Positions 12,775 through 21,857 are shown, counted from the stretch's first letter. The stretch: 64,000 nt of DNA from Chlorokybus atmophyticus (GCA_009103225.1 RHPI01003124.1:1-64000); one strand, 5' to 3'. Made by a program: numbers and translations. Notes: generated by a model from the sequence alone, not told the origin.

Positions 12775-15101
12775 GTCATTACTCGTTGAGGCTGACTATT
12801 GGTCAGCTAGATTGAAATAACAAACTGTTAACCATTTAATTAGTACTAGTTGTTAGCGCTAGGGTTAATTGACACACACACGTGTCAACTTACTGTTCAG
12901 TCGCGGCCGTCACCTCAGCGGCGTCGCTGGCGGCGGCGCTGACGGCCGAAAGTTCGCCCTTCCCGCCCCACCCTGTTGCGCCACTGCGCCGGACACATGC
13001 GCCCAGTCTCGATTGCGCTGGTCAGTGCGTACGCAATTGGTCATCAAACTGAGCTGATTGTGAATCCGAATGCGTTCATGACATGTAACGAAGATCCGGG
13101 TCATGTGAACAGCGTTTATCACCGTACGTTGGTGTCGTTACATCGACGATGATACGCGTCATTATCAACCACCGTCGGTTCGTCCCGAATGTTTGATGCA
13201 TCTACAGTTGTTCATCGTGTAAACCACAACTATAACGATGAATGCGTTGCATCGTAGGGCTTAGGTGTTCTTGCCAAAGTTGGACTGTAGGTAGGATTGT
13301 TGTTTGCGACAAAAGGAATGTAAATCGCTCATCGTGTGCAAAGTAGTATAATGCAAAATGCTCGGAGTTAGGGACCTAGAGACACGCCGCGGCATGCAAC
13401 GCATACTTTACCGCCAATCACGTCGTGGCACCGCTTCGGTGGCGCGCCAAAACCGTGCCAGAAAACCGCGTCTGACCACATGGCGGCTCCGTACACAGGA
13501 CCCCAAAATCGCTTTATGTAAAAGTGTCGCATGTACAGCACCTGACTGGTAGACGCTGTGGTTGAAGCACAGCCTGAGGTTCTGAGGCAGCCTGCGATTG
13601 CATGGAAGCAGGTTACATAACTCTGTACCGTGCACCGGCCAAGTGTACCGACAGGGGGGGGCGCAGATAGCTGTACGTACCTACTTGTATGCAAGTACTA
13701 CGCAGTACACTTTGGTGGATAAGCACGAGAAGGTTGCGCCCATTCTCTATTGTTTTTCAGCCATGCTTTTCCACATGCACAGTCCTCATGATGAAATGAT
13801 GCCTTGCATTATGCTTGGTATGCAAGTTGCCTAGCATGGTATGCTTGACAGTGTCAATGACTCTACGGCTAGGAAAGGCCTTTGGCAAATGGGGTTTATC
13901 TCAAATGCAAAGCAGGTTATGGGTCGTAAGTTCTGACTCATCACCTGATAAAACATTTGCCTTGTACGCATGGTATCAAGGCCCTTGGAATCCCCTTGCT
14001 CAAGTACGCATTACCATAGCAAGCCATACAGGATATCCTGCAAGACAAGCACGTGCAAAGCTGTCGTGAGCGATAACTACGCAGTGTCCAAAAGTCGCGC
14101 GCTGGCGCTTCATTACGTAACTTGTTGGTACTTTTGCCGCCAGAACGAAGCGCGTGATCAGCAACACTAGTTGACTACATCCAAAGACAAGAACGCTACA
14201 TCACCAGTTCTTAGCCGATCACTGCACAGACTGAAGCCGGTCACTTTGTCGGCCTTCTGCCGGCCACCTGGAAACAGCATTTGGCACTTGGCGGCTGCCT
14301 GACCGCATGAGCACAAAGGTTTTGCAAACAGTACGGCACGCAGGCAATCAGCAGCAGCGGCGTAGGTCACTGGTCTTGTGGAACCCATTGGTTTCCCACT
14401 CTCAGCGGCATTGTCGAGGTCAGAAACAGTGTCAGTGCGTAAAGGCCGCGCATGCACACGGCCGGTTGCCACTGCCGCGGACGGCGGTAAGACGGCAGGA
14501 GGACGACCACAACAACGTCCAAGACGACGACGTCGCCGACCAAGCTTCTTGCCGGCAGCTGTCGCTATCACCTTTTATCTAAGCAGCAAAATTCGCTGGC
14601 AACGCTTTGTTTATCAGGCGTTGTTCGTATCTTTCTGTCCAGCTCCGTACTTGCTTACCAAGTAGTCTAGCAAGCTGGAGGTTGAGCTTGATGTGACAAG
14701 CAGCGTGTCGATGGGTATATGCTACTGAGCTGCAACGTTATCTTGAGGTAGTTTGGTAGCTTGTTGCTAACACCTGAAGCTGAGGCGGCAATGGCTGCCG
14801 GCGGAAGCTGTCGGCTGCTGGCCATGGGCAGGAGCTCCGCATGCCTGCTGCTGTTGAGCTTCTGCTTGCTGCTGTCGTGGGCGGCGGAGCCGTCCGCTGC
14901 CGCACCAAGTATGTTTGCAATGTGGTTGCAATTTAATGCTTGCTAATTGTCCAAGCTGGCTTGCAAGTTCTGGCCGCAATTAGCATGCAATCTATGCGCG
15001 CCGTTGTTTTGCCAGTTTCCTCTTTGTTTGGTTCTCAACAATGCATGCACCGGTTTGTGTCCGTCAACAGGTATGCATGTTAGCGGTGTACTTCAATAAG
15101 C

Positions 15102-18100
15102 ATGGCTGTTGGAGGTCATCTTGCTCACCAAGTCAGCTGCCACTGCTACCCATCTATCTTGTCAAACTACAGCCCAAGTTGTTGTATCAACACCGGGCAG
15201 CGTCGCACATTGCATGCTAGGATTGTTGCGGCAGCTAACAGCACATATTGCACACATATTGTCGATCAACCTGCGGCTGTGATGGTGACGTCGCTGGTTC
15301 CCTTGCTGCAGAGATAAAGGCAAGAGTCAGCGCTCAACTGACCATGAATGTCAAGCAGGTACACTCAAATGTAGCGGAGGCCTTCAGCTTGTTGCTGAGC
15401 ATCATGCGGCGGGGCGCGGTCGACAGCTTGCGGACCTGCCGGCCATTCATCGGCATGGGCTTGGAGACTTGCACGTTGTGATTAATGCACTTGCATATGA
15501 AGATGCTGAAGCCCTGCTTGTTGAGTTGGAACCTTTGGGCTTCGAGTTGTCTGGAAGGTCAGCGCATGGTGGTGTATTACAGCGTTTCTTTCTGTTCTTG
15601 CACCCAAGTCATCCTGCAACCTTGACTGTCCGACAGCTTGCGGACCTGCCGGCCATTCATCGGCACGGGCTTGGAGACTTGCACGTTGTGTTTAATGCAC
15701 TTGCAGTATGGTGCATGAGCACCCGTCGAGTTAGTGTTAATGATGACGATGATGATGATGTTGATGGAGTGGTTTGTTCTTCTTTGTTTAGGCATGGTCT
15801 GTTGTTGAGTGGCATATTGCCAAAAGGAGCCATCAGTGCTTTGGAGGACTTGGAGCAGTTGCGGCATGCGGACCGGTCGTATCCGGCTGCACGAGCAATG
15901 GGTATTGCGGCAACAGCTGGCGACCAGGCAATATATACAGACGTGCTCCGCCAGGCTTACAACACCACAGGTACAGTTAGTTGTCAGATCAACCTTCCGC
16001 TACTGATTATCCTCGTATAGCTGGCCGTCTCACAGTTTTGTCTCTCAGGAACGGGAGCCAAGATTGCCATCATCAGTGACGCCTTCAACTCACAGAATGG
16101 GCTTGCCGCGGTCAGTGCATAGAGTTCCTAGCAAGTCTCACAACGTTCCTCAAAGCAACAACAGTGTACACGTTGTGACAAATGTCATCTCACACTGTTG
16201 TTGTGCCTACCAGGACATGTTCACGGGAGACATGCCCAGTGGAAGCAATTCAGTGGTTGTTCTCAGGGAGCTGTCACAAGTGCTGCAGGGACGCGATGAG
16301 GGGCGTGCAATGCTTCAGGTATGTGCGTCTCCTGCTCATGCAACTGGTTCCATTGTGCTGCATACTGCTCTCGCCATGCTATCCACGAGCATGGTTTTAT
16401 TCGATGTTGCTTTCTTACTTGGCTTTGCAGATTGTATATGATGTGGCCCCTGGGGCGACGCTATACTTTTTAAGTGGCTTTGCGGGTGCGGCCAGCATTG
16501 TGAGTGGGTTGCCTGCAATCTATGCGGCAGGAATTGATATCATCGTCGATGATCTTGGGTTTTATGAGGTACGATTGCGTATGCCATACCGGCGTAAAAT
16601 GGGCTTGAAGAGTACTTGCGTGCACATTTACATGGTGATGCTTGCTGTTGTGTGCGTTTGTGCCAAGTCCTATGTCCATTCAGGAACCATTCTTTATGGA
16701 CGGAGTACTGGCACAAGCTGTCGACCAGGCCTTTGCGACAGGTCTCATGTGGTTTTCTGCGGCTGGTAACGATGCAGGTACGACTGGAATTGCACTGCAA
16801 CCCACTCTACCTTGTGGTGCTTGTTTCAATGTGTGTTTTGGCAAAGCTTATCGAGTGGCTTGTATGGGGCGATAGATAATTCTTGGGAGGTCAGCTGTCC
16901 CAGTGGCTGCTCCTTCACGGGCCCAGGCAACTCTTTCGCCTTCAGTCGTGGTGTGTATCGACAAGAGATTTCCATTTGTTACTTTTGCACTGTCACCTTC
17001 GTGTTTCAGGTATGTGAGAGCGCTCATGTATCTCTTGTAACAGTGTTGCTGGGTCATGCAGTAGCGTTGTAGTTGACATGCATTCTAGTGGTTGATGGTC
17101 ATGCTTCGGCCTGCTCAAGAATCCATGTAGTGTGATAGCATTCAGGCTCATATACGGAACAATACATCAATAACCACACCTGTGCAGTGGGATGAGCCAT
17201 TTGCTTCTGCCACCAATGGTGTAGTTGGATCGTCCAGTGATCTTGACATTGCCTTGTACAGCGGGACTGGGGTGAGCATTTGGCTGCTGTATCTCCCGTG
17301 CATCAATGTATCTTCCCTTTCCTCTTCTGCAATGTCAATACACACAAATGTTTAGTGCGTCTGAATTGACACCATGCTATAGGTTCTGCTTGCAAGCAGC
17401 CGCGAGGACAACATCAAGTCGGGAAATGCCTTTGAAGTGCTCACATACACCTGCTCTCCTGATGTGGAGGTGCCATGCTTGGGTTACCTGGAGTTCATTC
17501 TCACCAGGGGAAGCCCGCCCAAGAGAATGAAGTATCTTCTAGTGGTAAGCCAATCTGTACACTGCACAGCCTTGTTGCACAGGGCAATAGTCGCCAATTG
17601 TGCTACAATGGTACGTTGCAGAAGTGCAATGACGTTGGTCAGTACGATTAAACTGCTGGCAAGCCTGTAAGTTTGGGAAGCGTGCAGACTGTCTGTGATG
17701 TCTGCAGTCATCTGGCGTTGGCGTGTCAGGCCCCACCAACCGTGCCAACTACGGTGCTGGCACCATTTATGGGCACCCGAACTCGCTTGGAGCCATTGCT
17801 GTAGGTGCTGCGGATTACAAGGATACCCAAGCCTTCGGCACTTGTCCACCCGTGAAGGCGAGCTTTTCCAGGTGCGGACGGTTCACTAGGGCTGATGCAA
17901 CCTGCAATGAGTGCCATTAACACTGTATGCAGTGTTGGAGGCGTGCCCATCCTCTTCAGCAAAAATGGCACAAGACTTGCAAGACCCGAAATACGACTCA
18001 AGCCCGATGTGATTGGACCAAGCGGTGCAGACGTATCCTTCTTTTCTATTGGCGTGACAGCTGACATACTGAAACCCTGCACTCTCCCGAACTTCATCGG

Positions 18101-21080
18101 CACAAGTGCTGCTGCCCCGCACTTGGGAGCAGCAGCAGCGTTGATGTTGTCGGTGTCACCCAATCTGACGGTGTGTTGCGTGTGATGGTGAAACGCCCGC
18201 ATGCACATGTGTGTGCGCGTCTCCTTTAGCAGATACACATGGACAGCTGCAATGTCTGAATACCAGAGCCTCTGCAGGCTGCTGACATTTATGGAGCTCT
18301 GCGAAGCGAAGGCATTGATATGGGTCCTCCAGGTCCTGACTTCCAAACCGGGTATGGTTTGAGTGACGCGGCCCAGGCTCTCCGTAGCGGTAAGACTTTT
18401 CTGGAACATAGCAAATGCATGGCTATTGCGCAGTACACTGAAACCAAATGCACATCTTGTGAATGCTGCATTGATTGCATGCTGATCTGGTTCACATGCA
18501 TGCAGCCAATGACAACGACTCTGATGGCGTTCCCACCTCCAGCGACCAATGCCCAAAAACACCTGTAGGCGAGGTACTGTGGCATGTAATTTTAGCACTG
18601 CTAGACAGATTGTATATGCAGATGGCTTTCCAATGTATGAATGACAATAACTATTGCCCATGATGACTACATGCGAATGCAAGCGCTCATTGAGATGCTC
18701 ACACTCACTCTGTGCCCAGGTTGTGGATGCCACAGGTTGTTCTGTCACTCAACTCTGCCCATGCTTCGGCCCCAAGGGCAGCTCCAGCCCTTGGCTAAAC
18801 ACAGCCGCGTATATCTGTTGCGTGAAGTCCGCCATTGTCGATTTTGTTGTAGCCGGAGTATTTAATGCGACAGATGCAAAGGAGTATAGAGCATTTGCAG
18901 AAGAGCTGCAATGCCGGAGTGGGCGCAGACGCCTGCTTTCAGAAAGCACAATGCCACGCCGTCGCCACCTTTTGGCCCAAGAGGTATAGGGCCATTATCG
19001 AGTGTGCAATGACAGTGCATCGCGCAGACTTGCAGTCACCAACCAAACAATGTTGATTTGTGATCGCAGACATGTGGCAATGCTCAGCCAATCTGTCCTC
19101 CTATACCTGATGGGTACATGGTGCTGTACGGTATCCTCACAATCAATCTCACGGACCCGTTCCAGGATCTGCTCCCACCAGTTGTCAACGACCAGCTGAC
19201 CAGAGCGTTGAACAGTCTGATCCTCCCTAGAGTACCTAATGCCATGTAAGCATTGCTATGTGGTATCTGCAACACTTCATTTGTTCATTCCTCCAGAAAA
19301 CCTGCATGCTGAGTAACATTCACATAGACTTACCCCGTAGTGTTTTGAGGCAAACTTGCTGTGCATAAGCACATTTGCAGCACAGGGATCAACAGCACCA
19401 TCATGGTATCGCTGACTCCTGTGCTGATCGCATGTCCTCTACAGCTGTCGAGCCACAGCTAACTATGCAATCCGGCGCTCTGGTGCACCACTCACAGCGA
19501 AGTACTTTATCATTGTGCCTAAACTTACAGGTACTAATTGCCTGGAGTTTCGCCACTTGCTACAGAGTGCCATTGCAATAGTGTTGACAGATTGTGACTT
19601 GATGTGGTTGCTGCAGAGAGCCCCGTGGTGCAGCAAACTATCATTGAGGCCAATGCAACTACTGACGGACAGCGCTCCCAGCTCACCTCAGCAGTCAATG
19701 CTGCAGGTAACATGAGAATGGCTTTGTGCACGACTCGCAGGTCAACTGCATGTTCAATGCAATTTTGCGCCCTTTGCTCTCCTGTTTGCACTTCCATTTC
19801 GCTGTGGTGGGTGGCCTTTCAGCTGGTATAATGCAGCCAGCTGACACTGGCAGGCTTGAGTGTGGTGAGTGTGACGTCAACGCTGCCCGTCCCCAGACCT
19901 AGTCTTGCAGTTCCTGCCATCACCCAGCCAATCACGCCGGTGAGATACAGCACAGCAACCCAAGTCCAATATCTGTGATGGTTCTGTTGCGTACTTGCAG
20001 TTTTGTAAGAGTTCTCTTGTATTTGACAACTGACTGTGTACACATCTCACTTCCCTTCTGCCATAGGCAATATGGTCACCCCTGCTCAACACCCTTCCAG
20101 TAGCGGAGTTTGCGTTCAGCGCAGCCCAGTGCGGCTCGAACCTCTTGATAGGTGGCGGGAATGGCAACAACGCACAGCAGGCATTCCGACTGAACTTGGA
20201 GACTGGTGATGCCTTTGCACAGCCGCCGGCTCCAAGCCCGGTCAGGTCTGGAACTGCGACAGCCATCACAACCGGCGGCAGCTGCTACTTTGTGCAAAGC
20301 GGGGGGCTGGCAGCCCCGAGCACAGTCGTCCAGATCTTGAAGAACGACGACAACAACCCTGGGTGGCTTGCGGATGTTCCTCCCATGAACATTGCCCGCC
20401 GAGGGCATGCATTGTAAGTGCCTAGTGACCTCAACATACTCGAGTAGCTGCAGATTGCATACATGCGTAATTATGTTGATACCAATCGTCACCTTGCGAC
20501 TTACAGGTACACAGTGGGTTCACGGATTTGCGCATTGGGTCCCTATCGCTTGAGCAGGAAGGTGGAATGCTTGGACTTCAACAACCGTGCGGCGGGCTGG
20601 CAGGTTCTGCCGCGAACGTCGGACACTGTCATCGTGGACTTCGACAGCATGTACGTGCAGATCGGGACGGATTTATGGTGCTTCCCCCCGGACCGCACCA
20701 AGCGCCGGGACATCTCTATGGACGTGATGCCGGCCAGGGGCAGCAAGCAGCCTGCAACCAAGGAATACAGATACGATGCCGTCATGCGGTTTCCCCGGCG
20801 CAAAGCCGCGGTGGCTGCTGTGCTTACGCGTGCTGGCCCTCAGGTGTGGGTTGCTGGCGGAATACTTACCTCTACCGGGGCCATCAGCAACGTCGTTGAG
20901 TTGTTCCACCCGTACTGCGACCCCCAGCTTGGTTGCTACTTTTGGACAACCCAGAAGCCTCTCAACACCGCGCGATCCAGCTTCGGTCTGGGCGTGCTCA
21001 ACCAGTCTGTCATTTTTGCTCTAGGCGGGTTGACCGACACCCGTGTCACAAACGACGAGGAGGCGTTCCTGATCGAATAG
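15102..21080 (+). CDS. Multi-exon bacterial-type subtilase (S8/S53-like) with TSP3-like repeat, Cys-rich domain, RRRLL linker and probable C-terminal Kelch propeller
   Basis: Exons give GTGAKIAIISD (Asp 16078), DEGRAMLQ (16295), DVAPGA, IIVDD..EPFFMDG..AQAVD, SAAGND, GHPNSLGAIAVGA, KPDVIGP, NFIGTSAAAPH (Ser ~18105), DMGPPGPDFQTGYGL; then NDNDSDGVPTSSDQCPKTPVGE|VVDATGCSVTQLCPC; then Kelch motifs (LLIGGG, PPMNIARRGH, VWVAGG, PLNTARSSF, IFALGG); stop 21078-21080. 5' start and exon phases between ~19250 and ~20070 are not resolved. Confidence 0.85.
15421..15705 (+). repeat. 75-bp direct duplication: exonic copy 15421-15495, second copy 15631-15705 inside the next predicted intron
   Basis: Two near-identical copies (2 mismatches) 210 bp apart. 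Confidence 0.9.
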
Positions 21081-21704
21081 AGCCCCCTGCAGACCAAGTC
21101 CCATGTGAGCGTGATGTCAGCAATGAGTGCTCCTACCCTAGGGTTTTGCCTAAATATAAAGGGGTGTCGTACAACTGCTGCGCCTGAAACAACAGCAATG
21201 CTCCAAGTTGCCATATTATGAGAGTTGGGTGTGTGAAGTGGTTTACCCCGAGCCTAGCAATTTAGTTAGTTCATAGGAACGACTTGGTATAGTACTGTAT
21301 GTATGCATGCAGATACAATGATCAATAAATGAGATCGGTTCACGAGATGAAAGCATAACATCGAAGTATGTGATACTGGCTGCGTACGGCGGGGCAATGC
21401 AACTGCGAGGCTTTTGTTGCTGTAGCGGAGTACATGCTAAGGTTTGGAAATCAGAGGGAAGGGAGTTGCAGGCGCAGGCGAGGTGATTATGTAGAATAGT
21501 GGGTTGTAGTTGTGGTGTTGAGCCACACCCCCAGCAAAATGCGTACATGACCGTTGCCCGCAAGCCTTTTTACTTATTGTGCCTACCAAATTTAACTATG
21601 TGACACACTGTTCTGTTCCGCCTCGCTGCTGGGGTGCTCTGCAACTTGCCTTTGTGCATAAGCCCCCAACCCTATGTTTGTTAGGGGGCTTGTAAGAGAC
21701 CCCC

Positions 21705-21857
<153 letters not shown>

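What the first reader, a model, noticed from the sequence alone, without database searches (positions are those of the whole stretch)
15102..18983. Intron-rich algal gene encoding a bacterial-type Asp/Glu/Ser subtilase with a bacterial TSP3-plus-Cys-rich tail: HGT candidate
Seen: IISD, DEGRAM (Glu where classical subtilisins have His), SAAGN and GTSAAAPH, followed in correct splice phase by DNDSDGVPTSSDQCPKTPVGE-VVDATGCSVTQLCPC..W.N...YICCV. Established (recalled): the DEGRAM..HD.APGA / EPFFQDG..AQAVD group is the S53-like subtilase group known mainly from cyanobacteria and other bacteria, and the DxDxDGVP..DQCP.TP...D..GCS..QLCPC module occurs in secreted bacterial proteins. Inference: horizontal or endosymbiotic transfer followed by many intron gains.
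Basis: partly seen in the sequence, partly recalled or inferred. Interest (0 to 1): 0.7.

Follow-up and report, generated by a model that had tools for sequence, protein, structure and literature searches.

The report
Bacterial-type Glu-subtilase gene in Chlorokybus
This is an expressed, 21-exon nuclear gene of the early-diverging green alga Chlorokybus that encodes a secreted subtilisin-like protease of an otherwise almost purely bacterial lineage in which an invariant glutamate sits where subtilisins have their catalytic histidine, so it is a good but not extraordinary case of gene capture from bacteria.

Summary
The gene is larger than flagged. It is the public gene model jgi/Chlat1/5433 (Chrsp36S05437) of Chlorokybus atmophyticus, 1159 aa, which maps without mismatch to window 14791-21080 (+) as 21 exons with 20 GT-AG introns. 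Intron-free contigs from two independent studies confirm splicing and expression.

Domain order: signal peptide, I9-like prodomain, subtilase fold with a beta-sandwich insert, one TSP3-like motif, a Cys-rich linker, a small alpha/beta region, and a weak Kelch-like C-terminal half.

The catalytic domain belongs to a very large bacterial lineage, about 37-42% identical over 466 aa. Glu215 is invariant (241/241), as are Asn296 and Ser538. Asp176 is kept in 233/238. No member has His at that site. The fold is closer to S8 than to S53.

Eukaryotes named among 240 listed hits are two Chlorokybus paralogues and one intron-bearing Vitrella gene, which shares no intron position with this gene.

Bacterium-to-alga transfer followed by intron gain, duplication and tail fusion is the best reading. 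The donor is unresolved, and neither a cyanobacterial link nor a Chlorokybus+Vitrella clade is rejected. Only the TSP3 motif of the tail has a bacterial match.

The parts
14791..21080 (+). Complete CDS of the gene (public model jgi/Chlat1/5433, Chrsp36S05437; protein P0151, 1159 aa). It has 21 exons: 14791-14908, 15359-15557, 15792-15970, 16049-16110, 16214-16318, 16431-16568, 16684-16777, 16876-17009, 17188-17271, 17383-17544, 17708-17871, 17933-18170, 18278-18389, 18506-18573, 18720-18983, 19070-19245, 19445-19530, 19617-19706, 19854-19939, 20067-20413, 20507-21080. The 20 GT-AG introns are 61-450 nt long.
   Evidence: P0151 maps codon for codon with no mismatch. Spliced contigs of runs X1 and X2 show the same joints.
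14791..14889 (+). Probable signal peptide (about aa 1-33): basic n-region, Leu/Cys-rich hydrophobic core, then a small-residue (Ala/Ser/Pro-rich) stretch.
   Evidence: Read directly from the translation. No signal-peptide predictor was available.
15364..15861 (+). Prodomain (about aa 42-129) with a beta-alpha-beta-beta-alpha-beta pattern of I9/pro-subtilisin type. It is conserved in the bacterial homologues.
   Evidence: AF2 model secondary structure. VIA alignments to pro-subtilisin E, ProN-Tk-SP and pro-kumamolisin start at model residues 1-36. A1 consensus.
15862..18388 (+). Subtilase-fold catalytic domain (aa 130-596), exons 3-13.
16078..16080 (+). Asp176 codon (IISD), placed at or within one residue of subtilisin Asp32, at the end of the first core strand.
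   Evidence: D in 233/238 family members. The strand 129-134 followed by Asp135 in the model. Profile alignments place it within one residue of the classical Asp.
16298..16300 (+). Glu215 codon (DEGRAM), first residue of the only helix between core strands 2 and 3, which is the topological place of subtilisin His64.
   Evidence: E in 241/241 members and never His. The helix 174-185 of the model begins at this residue. The alternative register residue (aa 206) is variable.
16768..16770 (+). Asn296 codon (SAAGN), equivalent to subtilisin oxyanion Asn155.
   Evidence: N in 247/247 members. It aligns to AAGN of solved subtilases.
16777..17728 (+). Beta-sandwich insert inside the catalytic domain (about aa 299-432).
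18105..18107 (+). Ser538 codon (GTSAAAPH), the nucleophile equivalent to subtilisin Ser221.
   Evidence: S in 284/284 members. It aligns to GTSMA.PH of subtilisin BPN' and others.
18508..18564 (+). Single TSP type-3-like calcium-binding motif (aa 598-616, D.D.DG..(3)D.CP).
   Evidence: Pfam TSP_3 at 21.0 bits for the exon alone, below the cut-off of 25. 64% identity over 33 aa to tandem repeats of the T9SS-tailed protein P0268.
18720..19114 (+). Cys-rich, largely helical linker (about aa 620-722), including CPC...W...CC.
   Evidence: The cysteines are conserved between the two Chlorokybus paralogues. No homologue was found elsewhere. The structure model has low confidence.
19115..19882 (+). 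Small alpha/beta region (about aa 723-834), best conserved around ATANYAIRR...TAKYFI.VP.
   Evidence: Paralogue alignment. pLDDT is 58-82 only in this part of the tail model. No Pfam hit.
20076..21077 (+). Probable Kelch-type beta-propeller (aa 857-1159), exons 20-21.
   Evidence: Kelch_6 at 24.3 bits against a cut-off of 25.3, and Kelch_3 weak. Predicted all-beta. Atlas feature hits to Kelch clusters reach only 0.76. Weak evidence.
15631..15705 (+). 97% identical copy, inside intron 2, of 75 nt of exon 2 (15421-15495). It is not used in the transcripts.

Best explanation
The window comes from Chlorokybus atmophyticus. Positions 14791-21080 (+) hold an expressed nuclear gene for a secreted pre-pro-enzyme with a subtilisin fold.

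The prodomain and catalytic domain descend from a large bacterial lineage that NCBI names 'S8 family serine peptidase'. Members occur in Cyanobacteriota, Planctomycetota, Pseudomonadota, Verrucomicrobiota, Acidobacteriota, Bacteroidota and other phyla. The lineage was taken up by horizontal transfer. After transfer the gene acquired 20 spliceosomal introns. It was fused to a lineage-specific tail (TSP3-like calcium motif, Cys-rich linker, alpha/beta region, Kelch-like propeller) and was duplicated (paralogue Chrsp31S04780, 63-65% identical, same tail).

Inferred mechanism: the prodomain folds and then leaves the enzyme, as in pro-subtilisins. Ser538 is the nucleophile and Asn296 stabilises the oxyanion, as in S8. 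Glu215, held by Asp176 (the invariant Asp214 next to it may also contribute), takes the place of the His general base, as Glu does in sedolisins. The tail probably anchors or targets the protease outside the cell.

Shown here: gene structure, expression, family membership, conservation and fold. Inferred: catalytic activity, the role of Glu215, secretion, direction and timing of the transfer.
For: Identity and structure: exon-by-exon searches led to the paralogue P0001 and then to P0151, which maps 100% onto the window. Cluster records name Chlorokybus atmophyticus.

Expression and splicing: contigs of 4085 and 4308 nt from two studies (2013 and 2021) lack all introns and show 20 GT..AG joints. 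8 of 10 differences in the second strain's transcript are synonymous.

Eukaryotic setting: a class I tRNA-synthetase gene split into exons lies downstream.

Bacterial affinity: 3628 hits. Apart from the two Chlorokybus proteins, the best 118 are bacterial or metagenomic at 37-42% identity over about 98% of 466 aa. The same pattern appears, where the only row named as eukaryotic among 120 is Vitrella. Loci in 24 bacterial genomes were found. Atlas clusters are 91-100% Bacteria.

Trees: the Chlorokybus pair (100*) sits on a long stem inside bipartitions that have bacteria on both sides (91, 95*; the corresponding branch has only 68, and the 96* branch is the one that sets Vitrella's 29-row set apart).

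No intron position is shared with the Vitrella gene.
Against: The root of the family tree is unknown. If it lies on the long Chlorokybus stem, the alga is sister to the bacterial sequences rather than nested among them.

The donor is unresolved. A Chlorokybus+Cyanobacteria clade is not rejected (p-AU 0.215). A Chlorokybus+Vitrella clade is not rejected either, and had a slightly higher likelihood than the free quick tree (p-AU 0.60). That leaves room for a single older eukaryotic or plastid-related origin, or for long-branch attraction.

Only the 240 best rows of two searches carry source labels, and Logan or metagenome rows could hide further eukaryotes. Mesostigma and other streptophyte genomes were not searched directly.

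The equivalence Glu215 = His64 rests on model topology and conservation. Low-confidence sequence alignments choose another register, and no residue-level superposition or coordinates were available.

No member of the lineage has, to my knowledge, been assayed, so activity is inferred.
Confidence: 0.72

Rival explanations
1. Endosymbiotic rather than lateral origin. The gene came from the cyanobacterial ancestor of plastids, moved to the nucleus, and survived only in a few algae: Chlorokybus directly, and Vitrella through its secondary plastid donor.
For: Many close homologues are cyanobacterial, including Leptolyngbya, Coleofasciculus, Gloeocapsa, Limnoraphis and Rubidibacter. The AU test does not reject Chlorokybus+Cyanobacteria (p 0.215) or Chlorokybus+Vitrella (p 0.60). 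Both eukaryotes are plastid-bearing algae.
Against: Free trees never place Chlorokybus with cyanobacteria. The cyanobacterial sequences themselves fall into two or more clades mixed with other phyla. This origin would need losses in nearly all other Archaeplastida. No intron is shared between the two algal genes. Vitrella is 50% identical to a bacterial sequence but only 36% identical to Chlorokybus.
Confidence: 0.12
2. The protein is a catalytically dead pseudo-protease that works as a binding or signalling module, like CspC/CspA of Clostridioides, which are the best Foldseek matches.
For: The canonical His is missing. The top Foldseek matches are Csp pseudoproteases that share the retained prodomain and an inserted beta domain. 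No biochemical data exist for the lineage.
Against: Ser538, Asn296, Glu215 and Asp214 are invariant, and Asp176 is kept in 98% of the held family members, which are only 35-45% identical to the Chlorokybus proteins. That pattern is expected for a working active site, not for a relic. Sedolisins show that Glu can replace His in this fold (established knowledge, restated in PMC11593635 and PMC6713707). Pseudoproteases such as CspC have lost the Ser or the His without a conserved replacement (my knowledge, not tested here).
Confidence: 0.15
3. An ancient eukaryotic gene inherited vertically, lost almost everywhere, with bacteria as the recipients.
For: Two distant eukaryotes carry it, and their monophyly is not rejected.
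Against: There are thousands of bacterial members across more than ten phyla, against three proteins named as eukaryotic among the listed hits. The algal sequences sit on long branches within bacterial diversity. There are no shared introns.
Confidence: 0.02
4. Bacterial contamination or a mis-assembly, not an algal gene.
For: Strong bacterial affinity of the catalytic domain. A poly-G/N joint at 21712-21856 lies between this gene and the tRNA-synthetase gene.
Against: There are 20 GT-AG introns, all removed in transcript contigs from two studies. A diverged paralogue lies on another scaffold. Exon GC is 56% and intron GC 47%.
Confidence: 0.01

Closest known systems
Bacterial 'S8 family serine peptidase' lineage with the TDEGRAM...HDVAPGA / EPMFQDG..AQAVD / AAGN / GTSAAAPH signature (e.g. 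Leptolyngbya sp. FACHB-261, Coleofasciculus sp., Gloeocapsa sp. PCC 73106). From memory, probably the CDD group 'Peptidases_S53_like'; this was not checkable here.
   Same: The prodomain, catalytic domain, beta insert and every invariant residue are shared. Identity is 37-42% over 466 aa, with E about 1e-80 to 1e-90.
   Different: The bacterial members end in bacterial surface or sorting modules such as RTX, Calx-beta, Big, PKD, FG-GAP, PEP-CTERM and T9SS tails. The algal protein has introns and a TSP3/Cys-rich/Kelch-like tail that is not seen in any of them.
Classical subtilases, MEROPS family S8 (subtilisin BPN', thermitase, Vpr, Tk-SP)
   Different: The general-base position holds an invariant Glu, not His. 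The loop after helix C is missing, so the helix runs straight into APGA. A roughly 130-residue beta-sandwich is inserted.
Sedolisins, MEROPS family S53 (kumamolisin, sedolisin, TPP1)
   Same: Clan SB fold, with a Glu at the head of the helix that carries His64 in subtilisin.
Csp germination proteases of clostridia (CspB, CspA, CspC)
   Same: Overall architecture of prodomain plus subtilase with an inserted beta domain. They are the best Foldseek matches, E 3e-18 to 8e-16.
   Different: Only 11-16% identity, a different insert position and size, and different catalytic residues. This is a resemblance of architecture, not of family.
HGT origin of land-plant subtilases SBT1-5 (PMC6713707; Yue et al. 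2012, PMC3493653)
   Same: Bacterial subtilase genes captured by streptophytes and then invaded by introns.
   Different: [quoted passage not shown] The gene here belongs to another lineage and sits in the earliest-diverging streptophyte branch.

Membership tests
Subtilases (MEROPS S8 / Pfam PF00082) | Subtilisin-like alpha/beta fold | tested here: met
Subtilases (MEROPS S8 / Pfam PF00082) | Pfam model above its gathering score | tested here: met
   43.8 bits against 21.8 for P0151. 23.6 bits for the Ser exon alone.
Subtilases (MEROPS S8 / Pfam PF00082) | Catalytic triad Asp-His-Ser with His in an HGT-type motif | tested here: not met
   Glu in 241/241 family members at the topological His position, with no conserved His in the N-terminal half.
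Subtilases (MEROPS S8 / Pfam PF00082) | Oxyanion-hole Asn (AAGN) and nucleophile Ser (GTS..P) | tested here: met
   N296 in 247/247 and S538 in 284/284. Both align to solved subtilases.
Sedolisins (MEROPS S53) | Glu general base at the head of helix C | tested here: inconclusive
   Glu215 is the first residue of helix 174-185 of the model. There is no residue-level superposition.
Sedolisins (MEROPS S53) | Asp four residues after the Glu on the same helix | tested here: not met
   Met219 (M in 231/244, otherwise L, I or S).
Sedolisins (MEROPS S53) | Asp in the oxyanion hole | tested here: not met
   Invariant Asn296.
Sedolisins (MEROPS S53) | Closest structures and profiles are S53 | tested here: not met
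Bacterial DEGRAM subtilase lineage | Full-length similarity of prodomain plus catalytic domain and the invariant motif set | tested here: met
Bacterium-to-eukaryote horizontal transfer | Gene is integrated and expressed in the eukaryotic genome | tested here: met
   20 GT-AG introns. Intron-free transcript contigs from two studies.
Bacterium-to-eukaryote horizontal transfer | Eukaryotic sequences nested within bacterial diversity | tested here: inconclusive
   Bipartitions with bacteria on both sides (91, 95*, only 68). The trees are unrooted, the stem is long (1.3-1.4), and they are quick searches.
Bacterium-to-eukaryote horizontal transfer | Patchy eukaryotic distribution | tested here: met
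   Among 240 listed best hits, the only rows named as eukaryotic are two Chlorokybus paralogues and one Vitrella gene. No intron is shared. Other algal genomes were not searched directly.
Bacterium-to-eukaryote horizontal transfer | Identified donor clade | tested here: inconclusive
   The backbone is unresolved. AU p is 0.215 for a cyanobacterial sister.
Thrombospondin type-3 repeat (PF02412) | Pfam model above its gathering score | tested here: not met
   21.0 bits (exon) and 16.6 bits (aa 590-720) against a cut-off of 25.
Thrombospondin type-3 repeat (PF02412) | D.D.DG..D..D.CP calcium-binding motif, as in bacterial repeats | tested here: met
   The motif is at aa 598-613. It is 64% identical over 33 aa to repeats of P0268.
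Kelch beta-propeller | Kelch repeats detectable by profile, or a propeller fold | tested here: inconclusive
   Kelch_6 at 24.3 bits against 25.3. The tail model has pLDDT 47. Atlas score 0.76.

The most novel reading that the evidence does not exclude
The DEGRAM lineage may be a third catalytic solution in clan SB. It would be a Ser/Glu/Asp protease built on the S8 scaffold, with the Asp at the subtilisin Asp32 site, Asn as the oxyanion residue and Glu replacing His, mechanistically between subtilisins and sedolisins. It has thousands of unstudied bacterial members and has been captured separately by at least two algal lineages. One of these, Chlorokybus, welded it to a Kelch-type propeller.
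Probability: 0.4. Interest if true: 0.6.

Novelty: new variant of a known kind. Interest (0 to 1): 0.45.

Why it matters
For algal evolution, it adds a well-documented case of a bacterial secreted protease captured by the earliest-diverging streptophyte lineage. The case is expressed, under purifying selection, duplicated and domain-fused. It is separate from the known HGT origin of land-plant subtilases. The 20 introns in a gene of bacterial ancestry give a lower bound on intron gain in that lineage.

For enzymology, the locus points to a very large, apparently unstudied group of subtilase-fold proteins. An invariant Glu occupies the His position while the S8-type Asp and Asn are kept. Testing one member would show whether clan SB has a third working active-site arrangement.

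Neither point overturns current views. HGT into streptophyte algae and Glu-based subtilisin-fold proteases are both established.

Tried and rejected
1. My first exon guess included a mini-exon at 15311-15358. The transcripts and P0151 show it is intron 1.

2. The look-up of encoding contigs for the paralogue P0001 returned nothing on record, so its introns could not be compared.

3. Sequence-only alignment of the N-terminal half to classical S8 failed or gave low-confidence registers. This applied to phmmer, hmmsearch against PDB, local hhalign, and global hhalign with and without the insert. These alignments were not used to assign the base residue.

4. The structure prediction of the tail (aa 597-1159, two-sequence alignment) gave pLDDT 47. 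No fold search was run on it.

5. A word search with the tail found only the query itself and one TSP3 repeat protein. Atlas features for the tail were below the useful range.

6. Gene neighbourhoods of six bacterial homologues showed no conserved partner genes, so they gave no functional hint.

7. The careful tree search did not finish in time, so all trees are 'quick' searches with SH-aLRT support only.

8. Literature searches found no paper on this gene or on a Glu-type S8 lineage. PMC6713707 treats only canonical S8A subtilases.

9. Words-based look-up of earlier scan notes on subtilases returned nothing.

Searches used single exons by reference, then the public record P0151. In one search exon DNA was concatenated in memory only to compute GC content, and nothing was saved or searched.

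Full report
**1. Observation**

The region 14700-19500 was translated in three frames. The quoted peptides are all there, each in a short open stretch bounded by AG...GT. Run exon by exon against Pfam, the 79-aa exon 17934-18170 alone passes the Peptidase_S8 threshold (23.6 bits against 21.8). The 23-aa exon 18505-18573 gives a sub-threshold TSP_3 hit (21.0 against 25). The Ser exon aligns to the GTSMA.PH region of subtilisin BPN'.

**2. Whose gene it is, and its true extent**

An exhaustive search with the Ser exon gave one outstanding hit, P0001 (69% identical, 1145 aa). The next best hits were 62% or lower. Cluster look-up names P0001 as Chlorokybus atmophyticus, jgi/Chlat1/4792.

A word search with P0001's catalytic region returned a second Chlorokybus protein, P0151 (jgi/Chlat1/5433, Chrsp36S05437, 1159 aa). 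Its tail is letter-for-letter the window's sequence. A codon-by-codon spliced mapping places all 1159 residues on the window with no mismatch. The result is 21 exons, 14791-21080, with 20 GT-AG introns of 61-450 nt and a TAG stop.

The window is therefore Chlorokybus DNA and the gene is an existing public gene model. From here on P0151 was used by id as the spliced product. No self-joined translation was sent to any tool.

**3. Expression**

Four runs from two studies hold parts of the stretch. The runs are labelled only 'RNA?', which is a guess. When laid on 15150-21100, one contig of 4085 nt (X1, 2013, no differences) and one of 4308 nt (X2, 2021, ten differences) cover every exon and skip every intron at GT..AG. 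Both continue upstream with the last 30 nt of exon 1. Contigs that lack all 20 introns can only come from cDNA.

Of the ten differences in X2, eight are synonymous and two are conservative (I332V, A872T), which indicates purifying selection. Contamination is excluded by the introns and by the setting. A 1-nt N plus a 144-nt poly-G run at 21712-21856 separates the gene from the synthetase gene, so that link is weaker.

**4. Architecture**

An AlphaFold2 model of aa 42-600, built with a 76-sequence alignment, has pLDDT 88.6 and pTM 0.90. It shows:
- a beta-alpha-beta-beta-alpha-beta prodomain;
- the subtilisin core;
- an all-beta insert of about 130 residues.

Downstream of the catalytic domain lie:
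- one TSP3-like motif;
- a Cys-rich segment;
- a small alpha/beta region;
- a C-terminal 300 residues with near-threshold Kelch hits (24.3 against 25.3).

The tail model is poor (pLDDT 47) and was not searched. The paralogue P0001 has the same tail at 42% identity, with all cysteines of the CPC region conserved.

**5. Active site**

In 284 held family members aligned to the family profile, conservation is:

| Residue | Conservation |
|---|---|
| Ser538 | 284/284 |
| Asn296 | 247/247 |
| Glu215 | 241/241 |
| Asp214 | 241/241 |
| Arg217 | 240/241 |
| Asp176 | 233/238 |

No sequence has His at 215, and no His is conserved in the N-terminal half.

In the model:
- Asp176 follows the first core strand.
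- Glu215 is the first residue of the only helix between strands 2 and 3.
- Asn296 follows strand 5.
- Ser538 heads the long helix.

These are the topological places of subtilisin Asp32, His64, Asn155 and Ser221.

This equivalence is an inference. The tools gave no coordinates or residue-level superposition. Low-confidence sequence alignments choose a register that puts His64 opposite a variable position (aa 206), which cannot be catalytic.

Compared with sedolisins, the Asp four residues after the Glu is Met219 and the oxyanion residue is Asn, not Asp. The lineage thus combines an S53-type base with S8-type Asp and Asn on a fold that is nearer to S8. [quoted passage not shown] I found no paper on this third pattern. 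From memory, CDD has a 'Peptidases_S53_like' model that may correspond to it, but this could not be checked.

**6. Relatives and history**

The catalytic region of P0001 finds 3628 proteins. Below the two Chlorokybus proteins, the listed hits are 37-42% identical over about 98% of 466 aa. They come from metagenomes or from named bacteria, including Leptolyngbya, Coleofasciculus, Gloeocapsa, Limnoraphis, Rubidibacter, Nevskiales, Rokubacteria, Thermoguttaceae and Gemmataceae.

A scan of one genome per prokaryotic species with the Ser exon found 24 loci, 19 of which carry a DEG[RA].M-type motif (18 by the pattern search, plus L021 with DEGAAM). They lie in Verrucomicrobiota, Cyanobacteriota, Planctomycetota, Pseudomonadota, Bacteroidota, Acidobacteriota, Thermodesulfobacteriota and Binatota. 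Atlas clusters are 91-100% bacterial. Bacterial members carry bacterial surface modules and have no conserved gene neighbours.

A third search used the catalytic domain alone, which admits shorter proteins. It revealed one more eukaryote, Vitrella brassicaformis CCMP3155 (P0343, 756 aa, DEGRAM present, 36% identical to P0151). Its gene lies on a 121-kb contig and has 9 exons and 8 GT-AG introns. None of these introns coincides in position and phase with a Chlorokybus intron.

Trees (IQ-TREE, LG+C20, quick search) show the following:
- The Chlorokybus pair is always a 100* clade on a long stem (1.3-1.4 substitutions per site).
- It sits inside an unresolved bacterial backbone, on one side of branches that have bacteria on both sides (support 91, 95*, 68).
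- Vitrella falls within a 96* bacterial set that excludes Chlorokybus.

AU tests do not reject Chlorokybus+Cyanobacteria (p 0.215). They also do not reject Chlorokybus+Vitrella, whose constrained tree was even 4.4 log units better than the free quick tree (p 0.60). All three algal rows have deviant composition and long branches, so attraction is a live explanation. Independent capture is nevertheless not proven.

**7. The tail claim**

None of the 289 other held proteins (nearly all bacterial or metagenomic) has a TSP3 motif followed by the GC...CPC pattern. A search with aa 597-1159 found only the query and P0268. P0268 is a protein with a T9SS sorting tail whose tandem repeats match D.D.DGVP..D.CP.TP.GE.VDA.GCS..QL at 64% over 33 aa. 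The match ends before CPC.

So the calcium-binding motif is of the bacterial repeat type. The Cys-rich part, the alpha/beta region and the Kelch-like region have no detected relatives outside Chlorokybus. The fusion predates the paralogue split.

**8. Verdict**

The most economical history is capture of a bacterial pre-pro-protease gene by the Chlorokybus lineage. Intron invasion, fusion to a targeting tail and duplication followed. The product is most likely an active extracellular Ser/Glu/Asp peptidase.

Confidence in the transfer is high. Confidence in the direction is high. The donor and the number of eukaryotic captures are open. The catalytic mechanism is inferred.

The case is solid and moderately interesting. 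Its most novel aspect, the unstudied Glu-type S8-fold lineage, is a property of the whole, mainly bacterial family rather than of this locus.

Noticed in passing
window 15421-15495 and 15631-15705: A 75-nt piece of exon 2, encoding part of the prodomain, is repeated at 97% identity inside intron 2. The transcripts skip the copy. It is a small local duplication.
   Followed up: partly
window 21712-21856: A single N followed by a 144-nt run of G, 630 nt downstream of the stop codon. It looks like an assembly or gap artefact rather than biology, and it weakens the physical link between this gene and the tRNA-synthetase gene.
   Followed up: no
tRNA-synt_1 and Anticodon_1 hits fall on separate exons. 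The gene runs into a 617-nt N gap.
   Followed up: partly
L025:8001-10869 (Vitrella brassicaformis CDMY01000323.1): The chromerid alga Vitrella has its own member of the same Glu-type subtilase lineage. It has 8 introns, none shared with Chlorokybus, and no TSP3/Kelch tail. This is a second candidate capture of the family by a eukaryote.
   Followed up: partly
L001, L003, L004, L007, L009-L018 (Verrucomicrobiota, Steroidobacteraceae and other Gammaproteobacteria): A well-supported bacterial sub-clade of the family has about 440 residues between the Glu and the Ser, against about 320 in the algal-like members. That implies a much larger insert.
   Followed up: no
run X2 laid on window 15150-21100: The 2021 transcript contig differs from the window at 10 coding sites, 8 of them synonymous. 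The 2013 contig is identical to the window. The 2021 material is probably another strain or cryptic species of Chlorokybus.
   Followed up: partly
window 20414-20506 and P0151 aa 857-1159: The Kelch-like half is encoded by just two large exons of 347 and 574 nt. The protease half is cut into exons of 62-238 nt. Intron density is therefore uneven along the gene.
   Followed up: no
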